Positions 35,462 through 54,255 of a DNA stretch of 64,000 nucleotides are shown here, in pieces (the stretch's first letter is position 1; the number at the start of each line of letters is the position of its first letter). This DNA comes from Thecamonas trahens ATCC 50062 (Eukaryota > Protista > Apusomonadida). The DNA is taken from NCBI RefSeq assembly GCF_000142905.1, contig NW_013657625.1, positions 35,690-99,689 on the forward strand, given 5' to 3'. The notes under the pieces are model-generated. The model made no database searches and was not told the DNA's origin. It worked only from the letters and a program-made list of their open reading frames with translations. Both the position numbers and the translations under genes were made by a program.

Positions 35462-37672
35462 ATGCTGCGATGGGGACGATCTGCGCTGGCTGCCGCGGGT
35501 CTCCGTCCACGGCCATCGCTGGCTCTTGGCTCGTCTGACGCCGATCCGACTGTTAACTTACATGCTGACCCTGAGGCGGCCATCGGATACCTTGCCGCCG
35601 AAGCGGCCTGGACTGAGGCGGCGGTCATGAACCCACTGGCGTCCGAGGTCGACGCCCTCGCGGCGGGCATGCTCCGCAAGCTCCCTCCAGACTCGGCCGT
35701 CCCGCCGGAGCGTGTCGGCGAGTATCTGGTGGCGGTAACCCTGCCTCCCGGGGCCGAGTATCCGGTCGTCTCGCGGACTCCCGCTGCTGCCCCCGAATCT
35801 GCGCCGCAGCTCGTCCTCGACCTCAACACCCTCTTCGACACCTTTGCCACCTCCACCCTCCAGTTTGGCGACGTCAAGCTCTCGCCGGACGGTGCCCGTG
35901 TCGCCCACGCACTCGACGTCGGCGGCGCCGGCTCCATGCATGTCTACGTCAAGGACCTCGCCACTGGGGCGTACCTTGACGCCGCCGGCTGGAGCCAGCC
36001 ACCCGGCGCTCCGCCGGCGCCCGTCACTCCCGACCCGATCTCGGCACTCGAGTGGGATGCAGACTCGAGAGGTCTGATCGTTGTCTCGGACGCTGGTGAT
36101 GCCGTCGGCATGGTGGGCGTCGGCCGCGACCGCGCTCCGTCGTCCACACACTGGTTCCTCTCTGCGCCTGCAGATAGCCAGCTCTTGAGCGAGCCAGCCC
36201 ACTTTGATCTCGGCACCACCTCGCGCCGATCATACCTCGCCGCTGGCCTCTTTGGTGCCTCGTCGTCATGCCTTTGGATCGCGCGGTCTTCCCCCGGGAA
36301 GCCTACCCCGCCGGAGGCCTTTAAGCTTGTCCGCGAGCCTGTGCCGTCCACCAAGTACTTTGCCGCCGAGTGGGGGGCCGACACCGAGCCCGATGCTCGC
36401 CTAGCTCTGATAGTTTCTTCGCCTGCTTGGCCCAACTACGCCATCGTCGACGCTGCCACCGATGAGCTCCTCCTTCCCCACGATCCAAGCTTCGCCATCG
36501 AGGACGCTGACGTCGTCGGAAATGTCGCTGTCGTTCTCGGGCGAGAGCTGGACTCGGGCCTTCCCGGCCTTCGGCTGCTGCGGCTTCCGCCTGATGCGCC
36601 ACTCGGCTCTGTGCCGCTGGCGCCAAGCCTTCCAAGCGAGCTCTCGTCGTTTGTGCCGGGCGCCAACTGGCAGCCGCCACGTGGGACGCCGTCGGCCCCG
36701 CCGTCGTACCGCCTCGTCGGCGACTCGCCCATCCATCACGAGTCGCCAGTCGACGTCAAACTCAGCGGCGCAGGCTTTGGTCGCATCGCTGCCTCGGCCG
36801 TTGCGCCTGCTGTCGCTGCCACCGTTGAGCGGTTGGCTGTCCCATCATCGCGTGATGCCGGGGTCTCTATCCCGGTCACGGTTGTCAAGCCAGCTGACGC
36901 TCCAAACGGCCCCATGCCGTTCCTCACCTTTGTGTACGGTGCGTACGGCATGTCGCTGCCCGAGACCTACGATGAGCGCTGGCTGCCGATGATTGAGCGC
37001 GGTGTTGGCCTGGCCTACATTCACGTCCGCGGCGGCAGCGAGCTCGGCCCGGAGTGGCACGCCCGAGGTGCCCGCGAGTACAAGGCCAACTCGATCTCTG
37101 ATTACGTCGACTGCCTCGAACACCTGCAGTCCACTGGCCTCGCTGATCCGAGCCGCACCGGTGCGCTTGCGCTCTCTGCAGGCGCCATTGTCGTCGCAAA
37201 CGTTATCCTCAACGCACCGCACCTGCTCTCGGCCGCCGTCTTGGACGTCCCCTTTGTCGATGTCCTCGGCGCACTCGATGCCCATCGCGGCGTTGCCGCA
37301 GCACGCGGCCTCGAGGCCGCCGACCTGGCCGAGTACGGCGATCCCCGGAGCGATGCAATGCTGCGCAAGACTATAGAGGCTTACTGCCCGCACGCGCAGC
37401 TCCTCGCGCTTTGGCGACATGCGCGCGACGCCGGCAAGGCCGACGCCGGCGGTGCCAATCGCCCCCGCCTCCTCGTTCGCGCTGCCGTCAACGACGACCG
37501 CGTCCTCCCGGCTTCGGTTGCCGCCTTTACCGCCCTCTACCGCAGCACGTTTCCCGATGCCGAGCTCGCTGTCGAGGTCGAGGACGACGTCGGCCACTTT
37601 GGCGACGCCGGTAAGATGGGCGTCGCGAGCGTCGCCGCCCGCCAACTGGCTTTTCTAGGCCTCCACAGATAA
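35462..37672 (+). CDS. S9A peptidase (oligopeptidase B/PREPL-like), possibly mitochondrial
   Basis: YLAAEAAWT, VLDLN, LSPDG, VYGAYG, HVRGGSELGPEWH, KANSISDY, ALSAGA (nucleophile), VPFVDVL, EYGDP, DDRV, GHFG; Arg-rich N-terminus. Confidence 0.88.
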   Translation: MLRWGRSALAAAGLRPRPSLALGSSDADPTVNLHADPEAAIGYLAAEAAWTEAAVMNPLASEVDALAAGMLRKLPPDSAVPPERVGEYLVAVTLPPGAEYPVVSRTPAAAPESAPQLVLDLNTLFDTFATSTLQFGDVKLSPDGARVAHALDVGGAGSMHVYVKDLATGAYLDAAGWSQPPGAPPAPVTPDPISALEWDADSRGLIVVSDAGDAVGMVGVGRDRAPSSTHWFLSAPADSQLLSEPAHFDLGTTSRRSYLAAGLFGASSSCLWIARSSPGKPTPPEAFKLVREPVPSTKYFAAEWGADTEPDARLALIVSSPAWPNYAIVDAATDELLLPHDPSFAIEDADVVGNVAVVLGRELDSGLPGLRLLRLPPDAPLGSVPLAPSLPSELSSFVPGANWQPPRGTPSAPPSYRLVGDSPIHHESPVDVKLSGAGFGRIAASAVAPAVAATVERLAVPSSRDAGVSIPVTVVKPADAPNGPMPFLTFVYGAYGMSLPETYDERWLPMIERGVGLAYIHVRGGSELGPEWHARGAREYKANSISDYVDCLEHLQSTGLADPSRTGALALSAGAIVVANVILNAPHLLSAAVLDVPFVDVLGALDAHRGVAAARGLEAADLAEYGDPRSDAMLRKTIEAYCPHAQLLALWRHARDAGKADAGGANRPRLLVRAAVNDDRVLPASVAAFTALYRSTFPDAELAVEVEDDVGHFGDAGKMGVASVAARQLAFLGLHR

Positions 37673-38518: not shown

Positions 38519-39364
38519 TTAAGCAGCGAAGGTCATAGCCAGTGCTGCGGTGGCAAGAGCGACCACAGCGGTGGGGAAGAAGACCGAAGACTGATGGGCG
38601 GCGGCCGACGTCGCCGTCTTCGCCGATGTGGTGCACTGGATCAGCTTCGAGATGGAGACGGTGGAGCCGTCGGGCGCGGTGGCAGTCGTCAGATCGCACT
38701 TGTTGTTGGTAAGCGGCTGAGCGGCGGAGCAGCCCGTGGCGCAACCTGGGTTGCACCCAGTGGCCACCTGCAGGTTGCCGGAGGCGTCGCAAGTCACGGT
38801 GAGGGTGCGGTCGCTCGGCGCAATGGAGGTGCTGGTCGAGTAGAAGCATGCAAGATCCTGGATGCTCGCCATGTTGGTACCGCACGACGGTGCGTTGTAC
38901 GTGGCGCCGACGGCCTTGCCCTCGAGCGCAGTGGGGACAGCAGCAACGCACTCGGCGGCGATGTTGTACTTGGTCGTCGTCACCGTCAGCGACGACGGCA
39001 CAATGTCGCTGGTCTCGAGGCACGTCGTCGCGCTAATCGCCACAACAGGTCCGTCAACGCATCCAGTCGTGCATGCCTTGTCGTCGCAGTATGTGGCCTG
39101 GAAGGTGGAGCCACCGGCGGTGCAGGCGACCTTGAACCACTTGTTGAAGTCCGAGTCGAAAGTGCAAAGCCCGGTCTTGGTGTAGACCGTGTTCGGCTGG
39201 GCCACCGTCGCGTTGCAGCTCGACGAACGAGTGTCAAACGAATGAAGCGCAAGCCACTCGGCCGAGCAAGTGGTGGCAAGGAAAGCCACCATGCCAAAGG
39301 TGAGAACAAGGGTGAGGTTGTACGTCTGACCGCTGTGTGAGTTGCGCACCTCTGGCGGAGACAT
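38519..39364 (-). CDS. Secreted, probably GPI-anchored Cys-rich surface protein with two 8-Cys domains
   Basis: Within ORF 38519..39742. ATG at 39364 precedes hydrophobic LTLVLTFGMVAFLATTCSA; 16 Cys in the mature region; C-terminal TATSAAAH spacer plus hydrophobic tail VFFPTAVVALATAALAMTFAA. Confidence 0.75.
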   Translation of the reverse strand: MSPPEVRNSHSGQTYNLTLVLTFGMVAFLATTCSAEWLALHSFDTRSSSCNATVAQPNTVYTKTGLCTFDSDFNKWFKVACTAGGSTFQATYCDDKACTTGCVDGPVVAISATTCLETSDIVPSSLTVTTTKYNIAAECVAAVPTALEGKAVGATYNAPSCGTNMASIQDLACFYSTSTSIAPSDRTLTVTCDASGNLQVATGCNPGCATGCSAAQPLTNNKCDLTTATAPDGSTVSISKLIQCTTSAKTATSAAAHQSSVFFPTAVVALATAALAMTFAA

Positions 39365-40327
39365 TAGACAAAAATTTGCTCCGAGACCTGTCCGGGGCAC
39401 ACAACGAGGACTCGCAGCCCCGTACGCTACCGACAGAGCAGCTTGCGGAGATAGGACAATATAAGGGCAAAGATGATATCTTGTATAGACAAGAGACTGG
39501 TTGTGGGTAGAATGGTTGGACAAGGAAAGGAATGCTCTTTGGAGCTGTGGAAAGGGACCACGGGGTTGGGGCGGTCGCGGTGAAACTTTTTCACATATTC
39601 GCGACCGCTGCCGCCTTCTACCACGCCCAATACGAGGCGCAAAGAGCTTTTCCGGCAGCCCGCAAGTCATCTTCCACATAGAGTAGTCTGTAGTACTAGC
39701 TAGATGGGAGGGGGACGATAAAGAACAGACGTAGCGTACCATGTTGATACTGGTTCAAGACGGGTGTGGCGAGTTGAAAAGTCGCGCGACGCTTTTCGTC
39801 CTCAAGACGACATGGTCTCCCGCGATTTGCGACTTGATCCGACGAGCTGCACGAGTACGGGGCACACGCTACGTATTCCCTACCTTCTATGGAAAAGGAA
39901 GGGGAAATTGATACCAGCCAGCCAGCCAGAGCACGCGAGGTGGAGCAGTTCAACTGCCTTGCCGACCTTCAGCCAGACAAACAGCAGCCCCTTCCCTCGC
40001 CCGTGACCGCCGCGTGCACCATGGACAACATGTAGCCTCCTCTTGCCAGAGCCCACACATGTGGCCATACGCAGGCCTTACGGCTACATCCTGACTGCAG
40101 CGCCGATTCACAGAGTGTGAACAAGGGTCAGATCATCCGCAGCTTCATCAATGGCAGGTTGAGAAAAGGGAAAGCAGGTTAGGCTGGTGGCAATAAGTTG
40201 GCCGGCGGGTGGCGGCGGGTGGCGGGCGGGCGACCGACAGTGGGCGAAGGCACCCCACGCCGACAGGTCACACGACTAGCCGCTGAACCAAGGGCAGGGC
40301 TACTTGCAGCGAGTGAGGATCGGGGAT

Positions 40328-42571
40328 ATGAAAGTTCGTGTCAAGAGGTATCGACGTGTTCGACGGGAGGGCTCTGACGTGTCGCTAACCAGCACCAGCA
40401 CCCATGGCGAGACCGGCGGAAGCGGTGGTGACGGTGGCAGGGGCGGAGGCACAGCCGCCGGTGAGAGCAGGGGCGGGAACGGACGCAGTCTCTCGCCGTC
40501 ATCACCTGTTGTTGCCTCGGCCTCGTTTTCCGGCTTTACCCGTACATCGTCTCATCATGGTCTTCATGGCCGCCACGGCAGTGAGACTGAGACCGAGAGC
40601 GAGACCGGGACCGGGACCGGGACCGGGACCGGAACCGGGTACGAGACCCGCGGCCGACACGCGCCACGTCGCAGAGTCCTGCAGCCGCGGACTAATGGTC
40701 GCAAACACGCCCACGCAAGACGGTCGCGTCAGTCTCCGGTAGTGGCGGCAGTGGCGGCAGCGTCGGCGGCCGCGCCGAGAAAAGCAAGCCGGCGGGCCGG
40801 ATCGATCGATGGAGGAAGAGCCGGCCTGAGCAGAAGCAGGCCGACCGGCGGGCAGCGGCGCGGAAGCGAGAGCATGGTCTTGAACCGCTCGCTTTCTGTG
40901 GCGCAGCCGCTAGGCATCCGTCGGTCGCTGGAGAGCCGCGGGCGTAGCGGGTCGTCGTACTCGGGCAACTCGATGCTGTCGGTGAGCATCTCGCCGTCGA
41001 TGTCGTCGTCGTCGTCGCCGCAGGAAGACTCTCTGTCCTCAGAAGACGTTTCGTCGGGCTCGGGCGGCGAAGAGACGTCGGGCCGGCTTTCGCCGCGGAT
41101 CGAGATCTCACGGTCGTGGTCGCGCCGACGCGGACGCTCGGTCTCGGTCTCGTTCTCGTCAGACGACCCCAACTCGCCGAACCGGAGCCGAACGTACCGG
41201 CGGCGGCGCGACACACCGCCGACCCGCAACCAACAGCTGCTTGTCGAGTCTGAGGATGACGTTGAGCATAGCAGCAATGGCGACGAGTCGTTTCTCTCGT
41301 CGTCGATGGAGGAGGTCGGTATGCACCAAGAATCGACGCCGGCCCTGGTGGCGCTCGCTGACCACGTGGCGCCGCCACACGGCGGCCCAGCCGCTGCCCG
41401 TATGGCTGCAGGTAGCAAGCTGCGGTCGGCATCGATGAGCAAGCTGTCGCCGAGCCGCCGAGGCAAGCCACATGGTTACTCGCCGCCACACGCGGTGCCG
41501 AAACACAGCGCGCCGGTGGCGCAGAGCGACACTGTGGTGCCCTCGCCGTCCCGACACGCGCCACCTCGGCACGGCGGAACTGTGCCCTCGAATCCCGCAA
41601 CGCTGTCGACTGCGCAAACGCTTGCTGCCGCCCGGACTGCGCATGCATCTCCTGCTGTCGACAACACACCGCGCCCCTCGCACTCGGCCCACGTCCCGCA
41701 CGCTGCACACAAGCCGCCTGTCGCACACGACAACACACCGCGCCCCTCGCACTCGGCCCACGTCCCGCACGCTGCACACAAGCCGCCTGTCGCACACGCC
41801 CCGCATACCGCACACGCTACACACGCTCCGCATGCTGTACACGCTCCGCACGCTGCACACAAGCCGCCTGTCGCGCACGCTGTACACGCTCCGCACGCTG
41901 CACACGCCCCACACGCTCCGCACGCTGCACACAAGCCGCACGTCGCTCACGCCCCGCATACTGCACACGCCCCGCATGCTGTTCACGCCCCGCACAGTGC
42001 ACAGCAACCCCGTCCGGTTGCATCGCACGCCCCGCATGCCGCACACACCCCACATGCTGCACACGCCCCGCACACACCGTACGCTGGACGCCAACCAGCT
42101 CCTGCAACATCACATGCTCCGCACGCCGCCGCACATCCAGCTCGCCTCACTTTACCCACGCACCCCATCGCTCTATCACAACCTCGCCACGCAACGCCTC
42201 CTGCTGACCCGTTGACTCTGACAAAAACGCTCGGATCGCGCCTCGCCGACCTCGCAGCGGCCTACAATCGCGGCGCTGTCATCACCCTCTCCACCTACTT
42301 TAATTCTGCGGGCAAGATCATTCCGTCGGGCACCAAGGGCGCGGTCTATGCCGGCCGCCATGCCATCCAGGCCTACTGGAAGTCGCTGCTGGCTTCCGGC
42401 CTCAAACACCTCGTCGCCACCATCGACTCGGCCACTATCACCGGCGACGGCAACGCCTATGCCACCGGCTCCATCGCCCACTCGGCCGGCGGCGGCAACA
42501 TCGTTGTCGTCGTCTCGCGCCCATCGCCGTCAGCGCCCTTCAAGATCGACGTACTCGCCATCACAGCGTAG
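40328..42571 (+). CDS. Disordered R/S-rich protein with His-Ala-Pro repeats and a C-terminal SnoaL/NTF2-like domain
   Basis: ORF 40304..42571, ATG at 40328. C-terminus LAAAYNRG...LSTYF...YAGRHAIQAYWKSLL...GDGNAYATG...FKI matches the DUF4440/SnoaL pattern. Confidence 0.7.
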   Translation: MKVRVKRYRRVRREGSDVSLTSTSTHGETGGSGGDGGRGGGTAAGESRGGNGRSLSPSSPVVASASFSGFTRTSSHHGLHGRHGSETETESETGTGTGTGTGTGYETRGRHAPRRRVLQPRTNGRKHAHARRSRQSPVVAAVAAASAAAPRKASRRAGSIDGGRAGLSRSRPTGGQRRGSESMVLNRSLSVAQPLGIRRSLESRGRSGSSYSGNSMLSVSISPSMSSSSSPQEDSLSSEDVSSGSGGEETSGRLSPRIEISRSWSRRRGRSVSVSFSSDDPNSPNRSRTYRRRRDTPPTRNQQLLVESEDDVEHSSNGDESFLSSSMEEVGMHQESTPALVALADHVAPPHGGPAAARMAAGSKLRSASMSKLSPSRRGKPHGYSPPHAVPKHSAPVAQSDTVVPSPSRHAPPRHGGTVPSNPATLSTAQTLAAARTAHASPAVDNTPRPSHSAHVPHAAHKPPVAHDNTPRPSHSAHVPHAAHKPPVAHAPHTAHATHAPHAVHAPHAAHKPPVAHAVHAPHAAHAPHAPHAAHKPHVAHAPHTAHAPHAVHAPHSAQQPRPVASHAPHAAHTPHAAHAPHTPYAGRQPAPATSHAPHAAAHPARLTLPTHPIALSQPRHATPPADPLTLTKTLGSRLADLAAAYNRGAVITLSTYFNSAGKIIPSGTKGAVYAGRHAIQAYWKSLLASGLKHLVATIDSATITGDGNAYATGSIAHSAGGGNIVVVVSRPSPSAPFKIDVLAITA
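41640..42140 (+). repeat. Coding His-rich repeat (HAP/HAA/HTA triplets), with a 69-bp duplicated unit
   Basis: DNTPRPSHSAHVPHAAHKPPVAH twice, then HAPHTAHATHAPHAVHAPHAAHKPP... Confidence 0.9.
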
Positions 42572-42603: not shown

Positions 42604-45600
42604 TTATGCTTCGTATCCCGGCTTCGGCGGCGGTGGTGGCGGCAGCGCGCCGCCAGCAGGCTTGGCATAGTTGAGCGGGAAAATGCCCTGCACATTGCTG
42701 CCCTTCACCTGGCCGCGACACCACCCGTCATCAAACTCCTCGATCACCTCCAGCATGTCGCCGGCCTGGAACGAGAGTTCGTCCGCCTCGCGACCGGCAA
42801 ACGCGTAAACTGCCTGGTAGGTCTCGATGCTCGACGGAGCTGCAGGCGCGGCCGGGGACGTGGGAGCCACAGCCACAAAAGGCGCTGTCGGTGGGAGGCC
42901 GATAGGATCCTCGAGCGGCGCAAGGTCAATCGTCACGTCGCCGTCACCCTCGTACACCCCAAACATCATGCCGGCCTTGGACGCCGCGCGCCGCTTGCGA
43001 ACAACCACAGCAGCGACCGTGAGGAGGCAACATGCAGTGAGCACCGTCCCGACAGCAATAAGCAGCCACGGCTTGCTTTGCGCGTTCTCGAGCGAGATCG
43101 GCGACGACGGTGCCGTCCGACCGGTCTTGATATCGCCGGCGTATAGCTCATACTCGGACGACGCCACGCCTTGCGCCCGGAAGACCGACACAAACAGCAG
43201 CCCCGACCGTGTCGAGTTGACCACAAACGACTGCTCTGCATTCTCCGGTGTCTCGGACCGGTACTCGTGGAGGACAAGTCCGTTCGGCCGGTCTGGAATT
43301 TCCGAGAACGAGCCGTAAAGGTAGACACCCGACGCCGCACGCGTGCCGGCACCGCCGCGGGCGCGCACCGAGACAACAATGTCAATCCCGCCTGGTACCA
43401 CCAGCGAGTACGCCCACCCGTCGCGGCTTGCATCGACTACGTGCTCAAGCGCAAAGCCAAGGTTAAGCGGGTCAGGGCCGATCGAGCATGACGGGTCCGT
43501 GTCCCATCCAAACTTGCACTCGCAGACCGAGTGGCAGCAGATCCCGTTGAGCCCGCATCCGCCAGGGCAGCTGTTCTCGCCCACGCACACCGAGTCGACG
43601 CCGTTGCACGCGTCGTTGATCGTGCAGTCCTGCTGGTCGTCGCAACTTGTTCCGGCCGGCGCCGGTACGTTCTGGCACACCTCGTCGCAGGTGTCGATCG
43701 TGCAGTCAAGCCCGTCGTCGCACTGGGCGTCGGTGAGACAGCAGAATGGCGCTGTCTTGCACATGCCCAACCCGTCACACTGCCCGTTGCACGTCGGCGT
43801 CGAGCACGTCTGGCTCGTCGACTCGTACTGGCACGTCGACGAGCAGCAGTCGCCGTCGGCCGTGTTCCCGTCGTCACACTGCTCCATTGGCGGCTCCAGG
43901 ATGCCATCGCCACAGGTGAACGTGCAGCCCGAAGGATCAGCCCCGAGACACGAGTCTGCCCCAGTGCCATCGCATGTGTCCGACGCCCCGTCGCAGCTCT
44001 GCCCGTTGTCGCACGGGGTTCCGTTCGGAAGATAGGCATCCGGGGGGCAGTCGTCCGAGCTCGAGCTGCACACCTCTGGCTGATCGCATAGGTGCCCGGC
44101 TGCAGACCGGCAAACTTCGCCGGCACGCCGCACGTTGGGCGGGCACGCCGCAGAGCTCCCGCTGCACACCTCCTCGACATCGCACACCCCAGCCAGAGGG
44201 CGGCACACTGTCGCCGAGCTCTTGAACGAATCGGCCGGACACGCCGCAGAGCTTCCGGTGCAGGTCTCCGCGTTGTCGCACGGCCCAGCCGCTGCCCGGC
44301 ACGCAGTCGCGCTGCTGAGGAACCCATCTGCTGGGCAGTCGGGCCCGCTCCCACTGCATCGCTCCTCGGCGTCGCACGGCCCGGTCACCGCCCGGCACAC
44401 CGTCGCTGCTGATTTGAACGAGTCAGCCGGGCATGCCGCCGACGAGCCGGTGCATGTCTCGGCGTCATCGCACACGCCCGCTGCCGCTCGACACACCGTC
44501 GATGCCGACTTGAAAGAGTCAGCTGGGCATGCCGCTGACGAGCCGGTGCATGTCTCGGCGTCGTCGCACAAGCCCACCGCAGCGCGGCAGACCGTGCTGG
44601 TCGGTGCAAAGCCGTCGCTCGGGCAGGTTGCTGACGAACCCGAGCACGTCTCGGCCACATCGCACACGCCCGTCGACGGCCGGCACACCGTGGCCGACGA
44701 TGAAAAGGCGTTGGCAGGGCAAGACGCTGACGAGCCCGAGCACGTCTCGGCCACGTCACACGGCCCAGCCGATGCCCGGCACACCGTGCTCGTCGATGCA
44801 AAGCCATCGGCTGGGCAGCTTGGCCCGCCACCCGAGCACGTCTCGGCCACGTCGCACACGTCGACTGCGGCACGGCACTCGGTCGTAGGCGACGCAAACG
44901 TGTCTACAGGACACGACGCAATCAGCCCGGTACACGTTTCAGCAACATCACACGGCCCAGCTGCCGGTCGGCACACCGTGCTCGACGAGCGCAAGGAATC
45001 AGCAGGGCAGGACGCCTCTGATCCAGTGCACGTTTCGGCCACGTCACACGGCCCAGCCGATGCCCGGCACACCGTGCTCGTCGATGCAAAGCCATCGGCT
45101 GGGCAGTTTGGCCCGCCACCAGAGCACGTCTCGGCCACGTCACACACGCCAGCCGACGCCCGGCAGACCGTAGCCGACGACGCAAAGTTATCGGATGGGC
45201 AGCTCGCCGATGAGCCCGTGCAGCTCTCCGCCACATCACACACGCCAGCCGACGCCCGGCAGACCGTAGCCGACGACGCAAAGTTATCGGCTGGGCAGCT
45301 TGCCGATGAGCCCGTGCAGCTCTCCGCCACATCACACACATCGACAGACGGACGGCAGACTGTGGCTGATGCCGCAAACCCATTGCTCGGGCAGCTTGCC
45401 GACGAGCCGGTGCACGTCTCGGCCACATCGCACACCCAGCCGATGGCCGACACACTGTCGATGCACTCTTGAACGAGTCACTAGGGCACGCCGCCGAGCT
45501 CCCGCTGCATGTCTCCTCGTCGTCGCACACACCAGCCGACGACCGGCATACAGTGCTTGTCGATGCAAAGCCATCGATGGGGCAGTTCGCAGAAGAGCCG

Positions 45601-48600
45601 GTGCAGCTCTCCGCCACATCGCACACACCTGCCGACGGTCGGCAGATAGTCGCCGAGCTCACAAAGCCATCGGTCGGGCAGCTCGTCGACGAGCCGGTGC
45701 AGGTCTCGGCCACATCACACACACCCGCCGATGGTCGGCAGACGGTCGACGCCGACGCAACGGTATCGCCAGGGCATGATGACGCACCACCGCAGGTCTC
45801 CGCTACATCACAAGGGCCGGCAGCTGGACGACACACCGTAGCACTCGGCTCGATTTGGCAGCTTGATGAGCAGCAGTCGCCGTCGATCAGGTTGCCATCA
45901 TCACATTGCTCTGCGCCCTCGACAACCCCGTTACCGCACGCGCACACCGACGGTCCGGAGCACACACCCGATCCGTCGCATGTATCCGGGCTTGAGCACG
46001 TGTCCGAGTCGTCACAAGACGTTCCACCTGCCGCAAACCCGTTAGCTGGGCAGGACGCTGACGAGCCGGTGCAGGTCTCGGCCACATCGCACACGCCCGC
46101 AGACGCGCGGCAAACCGTGGCCGACGATGCAAACCCATTGGCCGGGCAGGACGCTGACGAACCCGTGCAGCTCTCCGCAACATCGCACACGCCGGCTGAT
46201 GGCCGACAGATGGTTGACGGGCTGACAAAGGTGTCCGTCGGGCAACTTGCCGATGACCCGGTGCACGTTTCGGCCACATCGCACACGCCCGCTGAAGCGC
46301 GACAGGTGAATGACGGCGCCCGAAAGCTGTCGGCGGGGCAGGATCCCGACGAGCCGGTACAAGTTTCGGCAATATCGCACAAGCCAGCCGATGGGCGGCA
46401 GACCGTCGACGTCGACGCAAACCCGTTGGCCGGGCAGGACGCCGACGAGCCGGTGCAGGTCTCGGCCACATCGCACACGCCCGAAGCGACACGGCAGACC
46501 GTAGCCGATGACGCAAAGCTGTTGGCAGGACAGGACGCCGACGAGCCGGTGCAGCTCTCGGCCACGTCGCACACGCCCGATGCGACACGGCAGACCGTAG
46601 CCGACGACGCAAACCCGTTGGCCGGGCAGGACGCCGACGAGCCGGTGCAGCTCTCGGCCACATCGCAGGGACCGGCCGAGCTGCGGCAGACCGTAGACGG
46701 CGCTGCAAAACCATCCGCCGGGCAGCTCGATGACGAGCCAGAGCACGTCTCGGTCATATCGCACACGCCGGCTGACGGCCGGCAAACCGTCGACGAGCTC
46801 AGGAAGCTATTGGATGGACAGGCTGTCGACGAGCCGGTACAAGTTTCGGCAATATCGCACGGGCCGGCCGACGGGCGGCAAACTGCAGATGATGACGCAA
46901 AGCCATCGGCCGGGCAGGACGCCGACGAGCCGGTGCAGGTCTCGGCCACATCGCACACGCCCGAAGCGACACGGCAGACCGTAGCCGATGACGCAAAGCT
47001 GTTGGCAGGGCAGGACGCCGACGAGCCGGTGCAGCTCTCGGCCACATCGCACACGCCCGATGCGACACGGCAGACCGTAGCCGACGACGCAAACCCGTTG
47101 GCCGGGCAGGACGCCGACGAGCCGGTGCAGGTCTCGGCCACATCACACACGCCCGCCGAAGCGCGGCAGACGTACACCGTCGACCGGAAGCCGTTGGCCG
47201 GGCAGCTCGTGGAAGCGCCGTTGCAGGTCTCGGCCACGTCGCATGGGCCGGTCGATGCGCGGCAGGTCGTGCCCGCCGTCGCCACAGCGTTGGCCGGGCA
47301 GCCAGCCGACGAGCCGGTGCAGGTCTCGGCCACATCGCAAACGCCGACCGCCGACCGGCAGGTGTACGACGACGGCCGGAACTGGCAGGTCGAGGTGCAG
47401 CAGGCCTGTGATGGCGGATCGCACTGCTCGCCAGCCTCGACGATCGAGTTGCCACACGACGCAGGCGTGCCCGAGGCCGGACCCGAGTACAAGATCTCGT
47501 ATTCGCCGAGCGAGCCGTAGTCTGTGTATCCGGTTCCAGTTGCGGAGCCCTTGCCGACGCCGTCGACACGGAGGTAATAGGTAGTGCCGGCGACGCCCGA
47601 GTAGGTGACGACGGCTTTGACATCGGCCGATGGGTTGACAGTCGAAACGAGTGACGAGCCGGCGTACAGCCGGGCCTCGATGTCGAGGTTATAGAACTCA
47701 GTCGAGGTTGGCTGGACAGTAAAGGTCATTGAGCCCGACGAGCCGATAGTGATCTTAAAGTAGTCAACGTCGGTACGGGTCGAGATGAAGCCGGTACCGG
47801 CTGGAGTGGAGCCATCATTGAGAGTTGCACCCGAGGTCCGAGAGTCTGAGTGGTCATCGGCGCGGAAGCCGAAGCCGTTTGAGGAGCCACCAACGATGGC
47901 CAGATCGTCCTGCTGCTCGTTGGCGTCGGCGTACTCACCACGAGACCACTGAATGAGGTCCTGGTAGTAGCCGACACCCATGATCGGGCCCCAGCCGGTG
48001 ATGCCCGAGCCGTGACCCTGGTAGTAGCCGACCGACGAGGTGCCATCGTGGGAGAGGCCCATGTTGTGGCCGACCTCGTGCGAGCCGGCCTCGCCGCACG
48101 ACTTGGCATCGCCGCCGGCGAGCCGCTTGGTGAAGACCCACGCCGGCTGGTAGTACTGGCTGGGCTGCGAGAAGACGCCAACGTAGGCAACGCCGCCGCC
48201 GCCCGGATACCACGCGTCAGTGATGGTGAAGACGCAGCGGACACGGCGTGATTCTGACACAGCGTTGTAGACCGACTCGATGGTGGTGACAGTGATCTCG
48301 AACGGGGCGTAGTCCTCGGCCATGAGCTCATACATTTTGGAGATGCGCGTGAGCTCGGTGGTCGAGAACGAGTTGGTGTTGGAATCGATGTCGTACGGAC
48401 CGGTCACGACGTCGCCCCACGCCGAACCCGTGGCGTCGTGGCCGTCAAAGTCGAGGAAGATGACGTACGGCGAGCCCGGCTTTGAGTTGTGGCTGGGCGG
48501 ATTGAGGACCCGAGTCGCAATGGTATCCTGGGCCGGGTCGTAGTCGCTGTCACCGGCCGAAGGAGGAATGGCGTCCTGGCGACAGATGTGCTCGTCGATG

Positions 48601-49193
48601 TGGATGCGCCGAAGTAGAACGTGGCCGTCGCCGGCCTCGGCATTCGTCTCCCATCGGAACGCAGTGTCGTGATCAAAGAGCGAGACCTCGCCCGAGACGT
48701 GCTCGCCAGAGTGGGAGACATGAAGAGTGAACCGCCCGCCAGCGGCAAAGTGCGACGGTGAGCCGGCGAGCCGGTCCTCGGCAGACAGCGGCGTGTCTGG
48801 CGAGTCGACAACCCGACCGATGATCATCAGCTCTGCGCCGTCGTCCGAGTGGCTGACCGAGACCACGCGGCCGTAGATCGGGCCGAGGTCGGGCGCCATG
48901 TCCGCCGAGAGCACTTTGAGCACAGGGATCTCGTGGAGAAGCAGATTGGTGTTCCGCAGATGCGGGTGCAGGTGGGCAGCATGAACAGTGCGCGCCATGC
49001 TGGCAGCAAACCGGCCTTGGACCGGATGCTCATGATGCGGCGACGAGACATCGTGATCCGAGACCAGCAAAGCCGCAGAGAACAGCGAGAGCGGCTCCGT
49101 GCGCGACATGCCTAGCTCGACGGCGCGTGCAGCATGCAGCACTAGCAGCATCGCCATCACAGACAACCCAACACGTACCATACCCCGAAGCAT
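42604..49193 (-). CDS. Giant ADAM-like type-I membrane metalloprotease: signal peptide, prodomain, metzincin, PPC-like domain, 33 disintegrin-like repeats, Cys-rich and EGF-like modules, TM, SH3 (1-nt frameshift near 45436)
   Basis: Joins ORFs 44922..49193 and 42604..45453. HEVGHNMGLSH at 48080-48048 plus Met-turn WGPIMG; DVDYFK...YYLRVDG; CRxxxGxCDxxExCxGxSxxCP repeats; TM WLLIAVGTVLTACCLLTVAAVVV then RKRR; SH3 AVYAFAGREADELSFQAGD...DGWCRG...GIFPLNY. Confidence 0.88.
44014..47360 (-). repeat. Coding tandem array of ~96-bp (32-aa) disintegrin-like units, 14 + 19 copies
   Basis: Consensus CRASAGVCDVAETCTGSSASCPANGFASSATV, counted by hand. One CGNGVVEGAEQCDDGN...CCSSSCQIE block interrupts the array. 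Confidence 0.92.
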
Positions 49194-51946: not shown

Positions 51947-54255
51947 ATGAACCTTGAACTGCTAAGTACGTGAAGCTTGTGCAAGTGACCATGGTATGAG
52001 ACATAATAGAGTGTAGTATACTCACAATTATGCGTTGTGGTGATGGTGCTATGGGCGTACTGTGTATGACGGGCATTGGTGGTGGTGGGAGGGTAGACCC
52101 GTTCGAGAACCCACTGCCCGACGCCATCCAGCACTCGCTGCTCGACGGGTCTGCAGCATGCGTGGGGTACAACAGGCGAGGAACACTGCTTGCTGTGGGC
52201 TGCAATGATGGAAAAGTTCTGGTGTACGACACTTTGACCAAGGGCATTGTCCGCACCCTCTCTGGTCATGTCCAGACAGTCTCCTCAGTGGCATGGTCGC
52301 GCTCGGGCCGCAAGCTCCTCTCGACGGCTACTGATTGGGATCTGATTCTGTGGGATGTGGCTACAGGCGAGATCGATGCCCGCGCTCATCTCTCGAGCAT
52401 GGTCCTGGCCGGCTCTATGCATCCCAAGCTCAATCGTGTTGCGCTTGCCATCCAGCACCTGGTGGGCCCGGTGGTCGTCACCTTTGCCCAAGGCTCGGAG
52501 ATCGACACTAGCCGCAAGTCCAGCGTCCGCGCCCTCCCGCGGCTAGCTGCTCTGGACGGATCGGTGGTGGAAGGGCCGGCAGGTGCCGAGGTTGCCGTCT
52601 TCTCCATTCTTGGCAAGTATGTGTTTGGCGGCACGCCGTCGGGCGTGGTGTACCGGGTGCCGTTTGTGGGCGAGGACGGCGGTGAGATGCCGACGCCGAC
52701 GGCAGCTGACATTGTGGTCCAGACCGGTGCCGGCGTCAAGGACATTGTCTTTGCGCGGTCGGGCAAATTTATGCTGGTCAACTGTGCCGATCGCTCGCTC
52801 CGGCTGTACGGGCTGGCGTCGGACGATGTCGGGGTGCCTGGGTGCGACGCCAGCAGCGTCACGGCGTCCGAGTGCTTGCACCGGTTCGAGGACCTTGTCA
52901 ACCGCATCCAGTGGACGTGTGTAGCGTTCTCAATGGACGGCGAGTACGTACTCGCGTCGTCGGCCGAGTCGTCGCAGCACAACATCCTCGTATGGGATGC
53001 TAAGGACGGGACGCTGGCCAAGAACCTCGAGGGCCCCAACGAGGGCATTCTCGCCTTTACCTGGCACCCGCTCCGGCCCATGGTGGCATCGACATCGACC
53101 AAGGGCTCGGTCTTTGTCTGGGGCACCACCATTACTGAGAATTGGTCAGCATACGCGCCTGACTTTGAGGAGCTGCAGGAGAACACCGAATACATCGAGC
53201 GCGAGGACGAGTTTGACGTGATCGACGAGTCGGCGCGCAAGGCCGCGGCCGAGGCGCAGGCCTCGCGCGAGCACGAAGCCGGCGCCGTCGACGTCGTCAC
53301 CATCCAGCCGCTCCCGTTCGAGACTGACTCGGACATCGAGTACCGCGACGAGGACGGCGAGCCGGAGCTCACCCACGTGCCCGTCGACCCCATCCGAGAC
53401 TCGGCACTCCGCCCTCGCATCGAGCTGCCGACCGACGACGGCCCGCTCGAGTCGATGCTTCTCCCGACCATCGAGGAAGAGAAGCGCGCGGCGCTCGCTG
53501 CCGCCGCCGCCGCAGCAGCAGCAGCAGCCGTGTCCACCGCGTCGGGCTCTGTTAAGCCTGCCGCTGCCGCACCGGGCGCCAAGTCGTCACGTAAGCGCAA
53601 AGCCGAAGCGGGCAGCGAAAAGACTGGCAAGAGCTCGGCGTCCAAGAAGCGCAAGGCCAGCCGATCGTCGGCTTCGGCCCGCTCGGGCCCGCCGCCGCTG
53701 CCGGACCCACTGCCCGAGGGCTGGGCCACCTGGTCTAAGATGCGGCAAAAGGCGTACTGCTCGATCGAGACCGCGCCCAACTCGTACTACTACCGCCACC
53801 TGGCGCCCGGCGAGGAGCCCAAGTCGGGCAAGTGGGACGAGGAGGAGCACAAGCTCTTCCTCGACAAGTACCGCGAGTTTGGCGCGGCAGTCACCTCGTG
53901 GGGCCTCTTCTCCCGCCACTTTCCCGGCCGCGTCGGCTATCAAGTCCGCTCGCACTTTGTTGCCTGCATCCGCGAGGGCATCATCACCGACACCTCGCTC
54001 CCGATTGTTCGCGTCGAGCTCGAAAAGGCTGCCAAGGAGAAGGCCGCACGCGCCGCAAAGAAAGCTGCAGCCGCGGCCGCGGCCGCGGCCGCTGCTGCTG
54101 CTGATGCTGCTGCGCCGATGGAAGCCACCCCTCCCGTAACCGCTACCGCGGGCCCTGGTCCGGACACTGCGCCGATGGAAGCCACCCCTCCCGCAACCGC
54201 TACCGCGGGCCCTGGTCCGGACACTGCGCCTATGACGGTCATCAAGCCCGAGTAG
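51947..54255 (+). CDS. RBBP5: RBBP5/Swd1 COMPASS subunit fused to a C-terminal Myb/SANT-like domain (exons 51947-51965 and 52097-54255)
   Basis: Spliced N-terminus MNLELLNPFENPLPD; NRRGTLLAVGCNDG, FEDLVNRIQW, WHPLRP, ENWSAYAPDFEELQENTEYIEREDEFD, VDV; tail PNSYYYRH..PGE..KSGKWDEEEHKLFL...WGLFSRHFPGRVGYQ. Confidence 0.93.
51966..52096 (+). other. Predicted intron (131 nt)
   Basis: GTACGT donor, TACTCAC at 52019-52025, first YAG (TAG) ends at 52096; restores the conserved MNLELL start. Confidence 0.88.
54110..54234 (+). repeat. 57-bp coding tandem repeat, ~2.2 copies (APMEATPPxTATAGPGPDT)
   Basis: Seen directly at the RBBP5 C-terminus. Confidence 0.9.

What the first reader, a model, noticed from the sequence alone, without database searches (positions are those of the whole stretch)
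42604..49193. Giant ADAM-like receptor: metzincin + 33 half-disintegrin repeats + TM + cytosolic SH3
Seen: after repairing one missing base near 45436 (cacacccagc versus cacacgccagc in sister repeats) there is a single ~2196-aa protein. Order: signal peptide, prodomain with a lone Cys (EHIC), intact HEVGHNMGLSH plus Met-turn, PPC-like domain, 33 repeats of 32 aa, Myxococcus-type CGxG...EQCDDGN and Dictyostelium-type CDDGxxCTxDxC modules, EGF-like domain, beta-sandwich, TM, SH3. Known: animal and fungal ADAMs have one disintegrin domain, and their tails bind SH3 proteins rather than contain an SH3. Inference: a convergently assembled protease on a long stalk, coupled directly to cytoplasmic signalling, possibly for gliding adhesion, prey capture or shedding. 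This is the strongest candidate for an undescribed system in the window.
Basis: partly seen in the sequence, partly recalled or inferred. Interest (0 to 1): 0.85.

Follow-up and report, generated by a model that had tools for sequence, protein, structure and literature searches.

The report
Membrane protease on a disintegrin-repeat stalk
This is one intact gene of the marine flagellate Thecamonas trahens for a 2,196-residue surface zinc protease, built like an animal ADAM but from two bacterial-type modules plus a eukaryotic SH3 tail; the apparent frameshift is an assembly error.

Summary
On the minus strand, 42604-49193 encodes one 2,196-residue protein. The one-base frameshift is an error of the reference assembly: contigs from four public runs all carry an extra C behind 45434. 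These runs are two of the organism, one estuary metagenome and one seawater metatranscriptome.

The genome is Thecamonas trahens ATCC 50062. The domain order is signal peptide, lineage-specific prodomain with one conserved Cys, metzincin (HEVGHNMGLSHD plus Met-turn), PPC beta-sandwich, two disintegrin arms, Cys-rich region, beta-sandwich, TM, SH3 and a PPPPPPKP tail. The arms read Ds-(Da)14 and Ds-(Da)19. Of the 33 units, 31 match the published ADAM Ca2+-site III consensus exactly.

It is ADAM-like in design but not an ADAM.
- The metzincin-PPC cassette is 45-48% identical to more than 1,100 bacterial proteins.
- The 32-residue Da arrays are common in Myxococcota and Binatia (52-75% identical, up to 61 units).
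- No Reprolysin, propeptide or ADAM_CR family matches.
- Only two T. trahens paralogues and one metagenome protein share the combination.

The likeliest reading is an active surface protease on a Ca2+-stiffened stalk, with the SH3 tail coupled to cytoplasmic partners. The scan had already noted the paralogues on other pieces of this genome.

The parts
42604..49193 (-). Whole gene: one reading frame of 2,196 codons plus stop (stop at 42604-42606) once the assembly's missing base is allowed for
   Evidence: ORFs, translations, reads
45434..45437 (-). Apparent frameshift in the Gly codon of repeat 19; the assembly has CCC on the + strand where the reads have CCCC
   Evidence: sequence. table 4: extra C behind 45434 in X1, X3, X9 and X11. 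Bridging contigs are records 3, 21, 29 and 14
49122..49193 (-). Signal peptide, residues 1-24 (basic n-region, hydrophobic core, A-R-A before the predicted cut)
   Evidence: Read from the sequence; no predictor was run
48492..49121 (-). Lineage-specific prodomain, residues 25-234, with a single conserved Cys (HIDEHIC, 48579-48599). It matches no Pfam family
47859..48491 (-). Metzincin catalytic domain, residues 235-445. Zinc motif HEVGHNMGLSHD at 48045-48080 and Met-turn PIMGV at 47973-47987
   Evidence: Reprolysin_3, 23.5 bits. (45-48% identity to bacterial proteins). (catalytic residues invariant). (Z 9.5 to adamalysin 1dth and ADAM8 4dd8)
47460..47858 (-). PPC (pre-peptidase C-terminal, collagen-binding-domain type) beta-sandwich, residues 446-578
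   Evidence: AF2 model, pLDDT 82.9. Foldseek E 1.4e-5 to 5sv5. VIA Z 14.8 to 3jqw
47361..47459 (-). Ds-type half-disintegrin no. 1, residues 579-611, carrying the Ca2+-site II consensus (CGNSIVEAGEQCD)
   Evidence: (aligns to the SVMP K-like protein 3k7n, E 3.7e-8), PMC4885070
46017..47360 (-). Da units 1-14 (32 residues each), residues 612-1059
45834..46016 (-). Cys-rich linker plus Ds-type half no. 2 (TIGR02232; Ca2+-site II consensus CGNGVVEGAEQCD), residues 1060-1120
   Evidence: (E 6.2e-12)
44017..45833 (-). Da units 15-33, residues 1121-1726
43480..44016 (-). Cys-rich region with a third TIGR02232 module and an EGF-like Cys pattern, residues 1727-1905
   Evidence: E 3.4e-7. (co-occurs with the repeats in bacteria). 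The EGF-like part is a motif-level reading only
43075..43479 (-). Membrane-proximal domain of about 135 residues, probably a beta-sandwich, found only in this family, residues 1906-2040
   Evidence: No Pfam or PDB sequence match. Weak Atlas leads
43000..43068 (-). Transmembrane helix, residues 2043-2065, followed by RKRR on the cytosolic side
   Evidence: Hydropathy
42661..42816 (-). Cytosolic SH3 domain, residues 2127-2178
   Evidence: (SH3_1 E 2.7e-14, SH3_9 E 2.5e-12)
42619..42648 (-). Proline-rich C-terminal motif ALPPPPPPKP (class II PxxPxK type)
   Evidence: P0002 and P0003 have Pro-rich tails in the same place

Best explanation
This is one intact, expressed gene of Thecamonas trahens for a type I membrane zinc endopeptidase.

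Shown:
- The frameshift is an assembly error.
- The ectodomain runs prodomain, bacterial-type reprolysin-like metzincin with all catalytic residues, PPC beta-sandwich, then two disintegrin arms, Ds-(Da)14 and Ds-(Da)19.
- Almost every Da unit keeps the four Cys and the Ca2+-site III ligands of ADAM and P-III SVMP arms.
- After the arms come a Cys-rich region, a family-specific domain, one TM helix and a cytosolic SH3 with a PxxPxK tail.

Inferred:
- The prodomain keeps the enzyme latent, possibly through its lone Cys.
- The mature protease and its PPC binding domain sit at the tip of a long, disulfide- and Ca2+-stiffened rod. From there they cleave or grip extracellular substrates away from the membrane, such as prey, substratum or other surface proteins.
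- The SH3 tail ties the receptor to proline-rich cytoplasmic partners, such as the cytoskeleton or endocytic machinery. It may also bind its own tail.

Origin (inferred): the metzincin-PPC cassette and the Ds-poly-Da arm each have their nearest relatives in different bacteria. They were joined to a eukaryotic TM-SH3 tail within the Thecamonas lineage.
For: Intact gene:
- An extra C behind 45434 in all four runs. RNA-library contigs lie on 43401-46884 at 99% identity or more.

Organism and chromosomal context:
- P0001, P0002 and P0004 of T. trahens ATCC 50062 are 100% identical to other loci of this genome.
- The neighbouring genes are eukaryotic: WD40/Myb, Sec14 and an S9 peptidase.
- Base composition matches the neighbours.

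Likely active protease:
- H, E, H, H, D and the Met-turn are invariant or nearly so across 44 homologues.
- The fold is nearest adamalysin and ADAM8/17/10, Z 8.6-9.5.

PPC domain: Z 14.8 to ColH.

Arms:
- Pfam Disintegrin, 18 + 14 stretches, E 2e-104 and 2e-73.
- Alignment to SVMP and ADAM22 D domains.
- 31 of 33 units match CD(X)2(E/D)XCXG(X)4C(X)2(D/N) exactly. The site II consensus heads both blocks (consensus from PMC4885070).
- Purifying selection among units: pN 0.26 against pS 0.61.

Bacterial kinship:
- Cassette.
- Arrays.
- The cassette was not found in 5 array-rich genomes and was found in only 4 of 301 Myxococcota.

Restricted combination. Two metagenome scans found nothing.

TM and SH3.
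Against: - No protein-level, localisation or activity data exist.
- The Met-turn region of the model has low confidence, pLDDT under 50.
- No furin-type site separates the prodomain from the catalytic domain, and the Cys switch is only an analogy.
Rod rigidity and length are therefore inferred from ADAM and SVMP structures.
- The RNA evidence comes from metatranscriptome contigs, which can hold DNA.
- The direction of transfer for the 32-residue unit cannot be proved from so short a sequence.
Confidence: 0.7

Rival explanations
1. It is a true, highly diverged member of the ADAM family. It would have been inherited vertically from the common ancestor of apusomonads and opisthokonts, with its disintegrin domain later amplified.
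For: - The zinc motif is HExxHxxGxxHD, with the adamalysin-type Asp.
- The best structural matches of the catalytic domain are adamalysin and ADAM8/10/17.
- Ca2+ sites II and III are as in ADAMs.
- The overall order is protease, D domain, Cys-rich, EGF-like, TM, tail.
- T. trahens is a close relative of opisthokonts and has an integrin beta.
Against: - Pfam Reprolysin (PF01421), the ADAM propeptide family and ADAM_CR do not match.
- The catalytic domain plus PPC is 45-48% identical to more than 1,100 bacterial proteins at E about 1e-80, and has no significant sequence match to any solved ADAM.
- ADAMs have no PPC domain.
- The Da units are on average 81% identical to their best bacterial unit, against about 44% to an SVMP D domain.
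Confidence: 0.08
2. It is chiefly an adhesion receptor. The 33 disintegrin-like loops would bind the cell's own or another cell's integrin, as snake disintegrins and some ADAMs are reported to do. The protease would be secondary.
For: - Each unit is the loop-bearing half of a disintegrin.
- T. trahens encodes an integrin beta (PMC3002383).
Against: - There is no RGD, KGD or ECD motif anywhere.
- The loop sequence is nearly the same in bacteria, which lack integrins.
- In ADAM and P-III structures the loop is packed against the next subdomain and is inaccessible (PMC4885070).
- Some TM proteins of T. trahens with unrelated cytosolic or head domains carry the same units, which fits a spacer role.
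Confidence: 0.12
3. It is a broken gene or two separate genes: a secreted protease with 18 repeats, and a separate repeat-TM-SH3 protein.
For: The reference assembly shows a one-base frameshift with overlapping ORFs.
Against: - All four read sets, including two of the organism itself and an RNA library, carry the base that the assembly lacks.
- The downstream ORF has no ATG or signal peptide near its start.
- The repeats on both sides are under purifying selection.
- The assembly shows frame changes in paralogues as well.
Confidence: 0.02
4. It is bacterial contamination or a very recent, non-functional bacterial insertion in the assembly.
For: Two large ectodomain modules have their best matches in bacteria.
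Against: - The gene lies inside a 273-kb contig between eukaryotic genes.
- It ends in a eukaryotic-type SH3, whose nearest matches are animal SH3 proteins.
- Its composition matches its neighbours.
- There are eight related loci in the genome.
- The bacterial relatives are only 45-75% identical.
Confidence: 0.01

Closest known systems
Animal and fungal ADAMs (M12B; for example ADAM8, ADAM10, ADAM17, ADAM22)
   Same: - Type I membrane metzincin with HExxHxxGxxHD and a Met-turn.
- The catalytic fold is nearest to this group (Z 8.3-9.5).
- The protease is followed by a disintegrin-like arm with Ca2+ sites II and III, then a Cys-rich/EGF-like region, a TM helix and a cytoplasmic tail carrying a PxxP motif.
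   Different: - No Reprolysin, ADAM propeptide or ADAM_CR family match.
- The catalytic domain belongs to a bacterial cassette family and is followed by a PPC domain.
- 33 Da units replace the single one.
- The membrane-proximal domain is family-specific.
- The tail contains a folded SH3, whereas ADAM tails are described as diverse and unstructured (PMC4885070). That ADAM tails bind the SH3 domains of other proteins is from my own knowledge.
P-III snake venom metalloproteinases, especially the K-like proteinase of Naja atra (PDB 3K7N)
   Same: - Best sequence match of the first Ds-Da module (E 3.7e-8).
- Short Ds/Da junction like K-like, which gives an elongated I-shaped molecule (PMC4885070).
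- Same Ca2+-site consensus.
   Different: - The SVMPs are secreted and have one D domain plus a C domain.
- No TM, no SH3 and no PPC.
- Their catalytic domain is a true reprolysin.
Bacterial secreted metzincin-PPC proteases annotated as 'PKD domain-containing protein' or 'M12 family metallo-peptidase' (Methylococcales, Microcystis, Scalindua and others; for example P0091, P0108, P0111)
   Same: - The catalytic plus PPC cassette is 45-48% identical over about 340 residues (E about 1e-80), with the same invariant residues.
- The cassette sits N-terminal to adhesive or spacer repeats.
   Different: - Their C-terminal parts are PKD, cadherin, Calx-beta, FN3 or FG-GAP domains, not disintegrin units.
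- Their N-terminal regions are shorter and mostly lack Cys.
- No TM-SH3.
Poly-Da ('half-disintegrin') arrays of Myxococcota and Binatia surface or secreted proteins (for example the L039 ORF with 54 units; P0133, a subtilase with 14 units; Sorangium cellulosum So0157-2, L032)
   Same: - Identical 32-residue period, with ungapped alignment over 5 units in 56 loci at 52-71% identity.
- The same Ds head, reading CGNG..EQCDPP..CC..C.F.
- The same interspersed TIGR02232/DUF4215 modules.
- 'Head domain on a poly-Da stalk' designs, including a protease head.
   Different: - The bacterial heads are subtilase, Kelch, other beta-propellers, PASTA or Ig-like domains.
- This metzincin cassette was not found beside the arrays.
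- No eukaryotic TM-SH3.
TraA of Myxococcus xanthus
   Same: A cell-surface receptor built as a recognition head followed by cysteine-rich repeats (PMC6626042). It is an analogue by design.
   Different: - Its repeats are of the TIGR02232 type, not Da units.
- It has no protease and is anchored in the bacterial outer membrane.

Membership tests
ADAM / adamalysin family (MEROPS M12B) | Catalytic domain matching Pfam Reprolysin (PF01421) | tested here: not met
   only Reprolysin_3 at 23.5 bits (cut-off 22.4) and Peptidase_M66 below its cut-off. PF01421 is not listed. PDB sequence search finds no ADAM at a significant E-value.
ADAM / adamalysin family (MEROPS M12B) | Zinc motif HExxHxxGxxHD plus Met-turn | tested here: met
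   HEVGHNMGLSHD at residues 372-383 and PIMGV at 403-407. These residues are invariant or nearly so in 44 homologues.
ADAM / adamalysin family (MEROPS M12B) | ADAM-type propeptide (Pep_M12B_propep) with a cysteine switch | tested here: not met
   Residues 1-221 match no Pfam family at E <= 0.1. A lone conserved Cys exists, but its role is untested.
ADAM / adamalysin family (MEROPS M12B) | One disintegrin-like domain (Ds + Da) followed by an ADAM_CR cysteine-rich domain | tested here: not met
   Disintegrin matches in 32 stretches, giving two Ds heads and 33 Da units. ADAM_CR is absent from the protein and from the genome search.
ADAM / adamalysin family (MEROPS M12B) | Type I membrane topology with a cytoplasmic tail | tested here: met
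   Signal-like N-terminus, one TM helix at 2043-2065, and RKRR on the cytosolic side.
Bacterial metzincin-PPC cassette (Reprolysin_3/Reprolysin_5-like) | Full-length similarity of the catalytic plus PPC region to family members | tested here: met
   1,504 hits at E <= 1e-3. The best bacterial hits reach E 1e-80 to 1e-108 with 39-49% identity over 83-93% of residues 200-600. The five Thecamonas-type sequences form one clade among them.
Bacterial metzincin-PPC cassette (Reprolysin_3/Reprolysin_5-like) | PPC (pre-peptidase C-terminal) fold directly after the catalytic domain | tested here: met
   Model residues 225-352 against ColH 3jqw: Z 14.8, rmsd 2.0 over 110 residues. Against ColG 1nqd: Z 13.7. 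Foldseek probability 1.00.
Disintegrin domain (Pfam PF00200), ADAM/P-III type with structural Ca2+ | Match to PF00200 above the gathering score | tested here: met
   342.6 and 243.8 bits against a cut-off of 35.1. The units match profile positions of about 45-75, and the first module matches 25-75.
Disintegrin domain (Pfam PF00200), ADAM/P-III type with structural Ca2+ | Ca2+-site III consensus CD(X)2(E/D)XCXG(X)4C(X)2(D/N) and site II consensus XCGN(X)3EXGEXCD | tested here: met
   Site III matches exactly in 31 of 33 units, and in 32 if one residue of length is tolerated. Site II is present at residues 580 and 1086 (the second with Ala for the consensus Gly), with a loose match at 1761. The consensus is from PMC4885070. 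Actual Ca2+ binding was not tested.
Bacterial poly-Da arrays | Tandem 32-residue units alignable without gaps, headed by a Ds module | tested here: met
   56 bacterial loci align without gaps over 160 residues at 52-71% identity. The 59-row alignment has all Cys, the CD motif, G and CP invariant. The Ds heads look alike.
SH3 domain (PF00018) | Full-length match above the gathering score in the cytosolic tail | tested here: met
   SH3_1 at 53 bits against a cut-off of 22.9, covering profile positions 1-47 of 48. Ligand binding was not tested; complex prediction could not be reached.

The most novel reading that the evidence does not exclude
Apusomonads built a working equivalent of an ADAM sheddase independently. 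They joined two separately acquired bacterial cassettes, a metzincin-PPC head and a Ds-poly-Da arm, to a eukaryotic TM-SH3 tail.

In addition, the poly-Da arm would be a large, so far undescribed class of Ca2+-stiffened stalk. It appears in thousands of Myxococcota and Binatia surface proteins and in several Thecamonas receptors.
Probability: 0.45. Interest if true: 0.7.

Novelty: new variant of a known kind. Interest (0 to 1): 0.55.

Why it matters
Thecamonas is one of the closest unicellular relatives of animals and fungi and already has integrins. It is therefore used to date the origin of the animal adhesion and signalling toolkit.

Here a membrane metalloprotease-disintegrin turns out to be an ADAM look-alike made from bacterial parts, not an ADAM orthologue. 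That is a warning against counting 'disintegrin' or 'ADAM-like' genes in protists as evidence for an ancient ADAM. It is also a clear example of a domain-level chimera of transferred and native modules.

The work also shows that the Da half of the disintegrin domain, with its buried Ca2+ site, is a very common tandem building block in predatory and social bacteria. No family model exists for it in the libraries searched, and I found no paper describing it.

Practically, the reference assembly has single-base errors that break large repeat-rich genes. The public gene models of this family should be revised.

Tried and rejected
- **Structure of five Da units** (alignment A3, 59 rows). There is therefore no model, no stalk length and no fold search for the repeats.
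- **Complex prediction on two copies of the SH3 tail.** The tool was never reachable. Self-binding of the SH3 and PxxP motif is unsupported.
- **Metagenome scans for further family members**, using the prodomain (A4) and the membrane-proximal domain (A5). No relatives were found.
- **Literature searches.** Thecamonas + disintegrin, ADAM + Apusozoa, disintegrin + myxobacteria, and DUF4215 + cysteine-rich repeat. No paper describes this family or the bacterial arrays. The two Thecamonas hits mention only integrins or domain statistics.
- **NCBIfam.** It has no model for the Da unit or for the cassette.
- **PDB sequence search of residues 1718-2040.** Nothing found.
- **Atlas look-ups.** Only weak leads.
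- **Metzincin next to bacterial arrays.** No metzincin lies within 6 kb of the 78 best loci. None is present in five array-rich genomes. Four of 301 Myxococcota genomes have the cassette, without Da units beside it.
- **Canonical ADAM elsewhere in the genome.** Only a Reprolysin_4-type protease on C54, without disintegrin or ADAM_CR.
- **Tree rows.** The row for the C79 paralogue was translated in a wrong frame (4 stops) and should be ignored.
- **Own gene model.** The window's own annotated gene model did not appear in the protein searches, probably because of the length limits. How the public annotation handles the frameshift is unknown.
- **Handling of the break.** I kept an X at the break in all scripts and searched the two pieces apart.


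Full report
**What is in the sequence**

The feature lies on the minus strand. Two long ORFs overlap: 44922..49193 (1,423 aa) and 42604..45453 (949 aa).

The upstream ORF runs through a signal-like N-terminus, a protease motif and many Cys-rich repeats. It then turns into an Arg/Ala-rich out-of-frame tail after '...CRPSAG'. The downstream ORF picks up 'VCDVAETC...' and runs to a TM segment and an SH3-like end.

At 45440-45431 the minus strand reads gct ggg tgt gcg, where sister units read gct ggt gtg tgc. One base of a Gly codon is missing. With X at the break the product has 2,196 residues. A simple pattern finds 33 units, 30 of them spaced at exactly 32 residues, in blocks of 14 and 19. Tandem Repeats Finder sees the 96-bp period over 44.4-47.4 kb at 66-85% DNA matches.

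**The frameshift is an assembly error**

I laid Logan contigs of four runs on 43200-47700. Two runs were of the organism (samples of 2010 and 2020), one was an estuary metagenome and one a seawater metatranscriptome.

The only insertion or deletion shared by all four is 'put in behind 45434: C'. It is seen in every contig that bridges the site: X1 record 3, X3 record 21, X9 record 29 and X11 record 14 (tables 4 and 8). The true sequence therefore has four C (four G on the coding strand), the Gly codon is complete, and the gene is one open frame.

Contigs from the RNA library lie on 43401-46884 at 99% identity or better. This suggests expression in the sea, with the caveat that such libraries can hold DNA. 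No credible splice joint was seen. The two joints in X11 have short sides inside the repeats.

The same assembly shows frame changes in paralogues. Single-base errors may therefore be common in this repeat-rich family, although the paralogue breaks were not checked against reads.

**Organism and family**

The genome (28.7 Mb, 131 contigs) is Thecamonas trahens ATCC 50062. Three of its annotated proteins are 100% identical to other loci of this genome: AMSG_10016, a protein named 'disintegrin', and a 'peptidase domain-containing protein'.

The family has eight loci:
- This gene: 33 units, TM, SH3.
- AMSG_10016, 32 kb away on the same contig: 8 units, TM, SH3.
- A C15 gene: 18 units, SH3, two frame changes in the assembly.
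- A C45 gene: no units and no SH3.
- Four distant loci with the protease-PPC part only.

The window gene and AMSG_10016 share 93% DNA identity over the 1.8 kb compared, a match that starts 99 nt after the ATG. Their upstream regions and signal peptides are unrelated. Amino-acid identity falls from 97% in the prodomain to 52% in the tail.

**The head**

Residues 200-600 find the T. trahens paralogues, one metagenome protein (P0003, 71% identity) and then more than a thousand bacterial proteins. The best bacterial hits have E of 1e-75 to 1e-108 and 39-49% identity over 83-94% of the region. They carry PKD, cadherin, Calx-beta, FN3 or FG-GAP domains. The named ones are from Methylococcales, Microcystis, Dolichospermum, Scalindua, Phycisphaerae and Thermoguttaceae.

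Pfam gives only a borderline Reprolysin_3 hit. NCBIfam has no model for the domain. No solved protein is a clear sequence relative.

An AF2 model of residues 222-578 has mean pLDDT 82.9, but is poor around the Met-turn. It splits in two parts:
- The C-terminal part is a PPC, collagen-binding-type sandwich: Z 14.8 to ColH 3jqw and Z 13.7 to ColG.
- The N-terminal part is closest to adamalysin II, ADAM8, ADAMTS1/5, ADAM17 and ADAM10: Z 8.6-9.5, rmsd 3.4-4.6, about 150 residues aligned.

The zinc ligands, the catalytic Glu, the Asp after the third His and the Met-turn are invariant or nearly so in 44 homologues. I therefore take the enzyme to be active.

The roughly 210-residue prodomain has no Pfam family. 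It is conserved only in the Thecamonas-type proteins and holds one invariant Cys in HIDEH[IV]C. Most bacterial relatives have shorter N-terminal regions without Cys. A cysteine switch is possible but is only an analogy.

In a tree, the five Thecamonas-type sequences form one clade (SH-aLRT 100). All other interpretable rows are bacterial or metagenomic; two distant T. trahens paralogues fall outside the clade, one of them mistranslated. The root is unknown.

**The arms**

Pfam Disintegrin matches in 18 + 14 stretches. The units cover only profile positions of about 45-75, which is the loop-bearing C-terminal half. The first module, with its N-terminal half, aligns to P-III snake metalloproteinases and ADAM22. 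The best match is the short-junction K-like proteinase 3K7N.

A structural review (PMC4885070) divides the ADAM D domain into Ds and Da. It gives two consensus patterns for buried structural Ca2+ ions:
- Site II in Ds: XCGN(X)3EXGEXCD.
- Site III in Da: CD(X)2(E/D)XCXG(X)4C(X)2(D/N).

The unit consensus here is CR[AP]SAGVCDVAETCTGSSASCPA[DN]GFASSATV. Site III matches exactly in 31 of 33 units. Site II is present at residues 580 and 1086 (the second with Ala for the consensus Gly), each heading one block. The ectodomain therefore reads Ds-(Da)14, a Cys-rich linker, then Ds-(Da)19.

There is no RGD, KGD or ECD motif. Among units, synonymous sites are near saturation (pS 0.61) while non-synonymous sites are not (pN 0.26). 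The units are old and maintained, with a few recent copies; units 4 and 9 are 98% identical at the DNA level.

The review notes two further points. In ADAMs and P-III enzymes the loop is packed against the next subdomain and is inaccessible. The arm is rigid because of its disulfides and Ca2+ ions. I infer that the tandem Da units form a stiff rod of several tens of nanometres. I could not model it, so the length is a guess.

**The arms are a bacterial commonplace**

Four units used as a query against 1.84 billion cluster representatives give 4,938 proteins at E <= 1e-3 and 1,805 at E <= 1e-30. The best hits match the whole query 5-25 times over.

In species-representative genomes, at least 588 loci match. 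The best 80 are Myxococcota (Polyangia, Myxococcaceae, Sorangium cellulosum So0157-2), Binatia and a few other groups, at 58-75% identity over all 128 residues.

Further evidence:
- 56 loci align without a gap over five units.
- Arrays reach 60-61 units in Binatia.
- 42 of 301 sampled Myxococcota genomes have them.
- Bacterial arrays begin with the same Ds head, CGNG..EQCDPP..CC..C.F.
- They are interspersed with the same TIGR02232/DUF4215 and CTDC-type modules.

Their head domains vary: Kelch or other propellers, PASTA, Ig-like domains, and in P0133 a subtilase. One such gene sits in a plainly bacterial context.

A window unit is on average 81% identical to its best bacterial unit and 79% to its best unit in another Thecamonas gene. 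The larger bacterial pool favours the first figure.

T. trahens also uses Da units in other TM proteins: two tandem RasGAP receptors, a BNR-like protein and others. This use in proteins with unrelated partner domains, in both bacteria and T. trahens, fits a spacer or stalk module rather than an integrin ligand.

**The combination is restricted**

I scored the whole first piece (1,252 aa) against 5.8 billion proteins of 689-2,191 aa. Only P0001 and P0002 (T. trahens) and P0003 (a 4.3-kb ENA metagenome contig) cover more than 56% of it and also carry Disintegrin. Every bacterial hit covers 26-35%, which is the cassette alone.

Other negative results point the same way:
- No metzincin lies within 6 kb of the 78 best bacterial arrays.
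- The cassette is missing from five array-rich genomes.
- It is present in only 4 of 301 Myxococcota genomes, at 27-42% identity and without Da units beside it.
- The membrane-proximal domain, TM and SH3 together find only the T. trahens paralogue. Other hits are SH3-only matches to animal proteins such as SH3PXD2B.
- Two metagenome scans with the lineage-specific domains found nothing.

The head and the arm therefore have their nearest relatives in different bacteria, and the tail is eukaryotic. The parsimonious reading is that they were joined in the Thecamonas lineage. The gene is chromosomal, flanked by eukaryotic genes, and has the composition of its neighbours.

**The tail**

One TM helix (2043-2065) is followed by RKRR, which places the C-terminus in the cytosol. 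The 131-residue tail holds a full SH3 (SH3_1, E 2.7e-14) and ends in ALPPPPPPKP.

Two relatives, P0002 and P0003, also have Pro-rich tails after the SH3. Self-binding or cross-linking is an attractive idea, but I could not test it.

**Comparison with the known**

It works like an ADAM: a membrane metzincin with a disintegrin-type arm and a signalling-competent tail. It fails the membership tests for the ADAM family. It has no Reprolysin, ADAM propeptide or ADAM_CR match, and it has a PPC domain that ADAMs lack.

I found no canonical ADAM in the genome. There is only a Reprolysin_4-type protease on C54. An integrin beta is present, as published (PMC3002383).

I found no paper on this family or on bacterial poly-Da arrays. 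Related context:
- A 2026 preprint proposes that other cysteine-rich repeats mark transferred genes in eukaryotes.
- A diatom adhesive-trail protein carries Myxococcus Cys-rich repeats.
- TraA of Myxococcus is a recognition head on cysteine-rich repeats.

**Verdict**

It is a new variant of a known kind: an ADAM-like surface protease assembled from bacterial-type modules and restricted, as far as searched, to the Thecamonas lineage.

The repeat array, which looked like the oddest feature, is ordinary in bacteria. The bacterial arrays themselves, however, appear undescribed.

The scan's first readers had already noted the paralogues and the bacterial look of the head on this genome. I tested those notes here.

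Noticed in passing
L093:2777-7339 (G000:C55, about 13 kb beyond the window's end): The paralogue AMSG_10016 has 8 Da units, a TM helix and an SH3. It shares 93% DNA identity with the window gene over the 1.8 kb compared, starting 99 nt after the ATG, but has an unrelated upstream region and signal peptide. Amino-acid identity falls steadily from N to C: 97, 92, 82, 73, 61 and 52%. This pattern suggests partial gene conversion or a 5' duplication.
   Followed up: partly
L094:2386-7444 (G000:C15): The paralogue annotated 'disintegrin' (P0002) changes frame twice in the assembly. At the first break one base is missing in 'tgg ta-', which is not a homopolymer. The public model jumps 50 nt there and reads a stretch of the catalytic domain out of frame. 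Whether this is an assembly error was not checked with reads.
   Followed up: partly
L101:1176-8769 (G000:C40): Two tandem genes encode TM proteins with 4 Da units each in the ectodomain and a cytosolic RasGAP domain. A BNR-like protein (L102) and further TM proteins (L103, L104) also carry Da units.
   Followed up: partly
P0133; L039:5158-12318; L076: Bacterial poly-Da proteins. P0133 is a subtilase followed by DUF4215 and 14 units, so a protease on a Da stalk also exists in bacteria. A Binatia ORF of 2,386 aa has 54 Disintegrin stretches and CTDC repeats. Arrays reach 61 units. Neither Pfam nor NCBIfam has a model for the unit itself.
   Followed up: partly
window 44860-47217: One metatranscriptome contig (X11) joins 44860 to 47217, skipping 2,356 bases, and another goes back 1,151 bases. 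Both have short sides inside the repeats. These are most likely assembly mis-joins between similar units, though copy-number variants of the array cannot be excluded.
   Followed up: no
window 52030-54255 (+): An ORF of 741 aa has WD40 repeats at its N-terminus and a Myb-like DNA-binding domain near residue 600.
   Followed up: no
window 35462-37672 (+) and 54357-55649 (+): Ordinary eukaryotic neighbours: a prolyl oligopeptidase (S9) and a Sec14/CRAL-TRIO protein. The ORFs at 40304-42571 (+), 38519-39742 (-) and 57057-60164 (+) match no Pfam family.
   Followed up: no
L105:1979-5170 (G000:C54): A 1,063-aa ORF has a Reprolysin_4/5/3-type metalloprotease domain but no disintegrin or ADAM_CR. It is the only genome hit to Pfam Reprolysin, and a marginal one.
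   Followed up: partly
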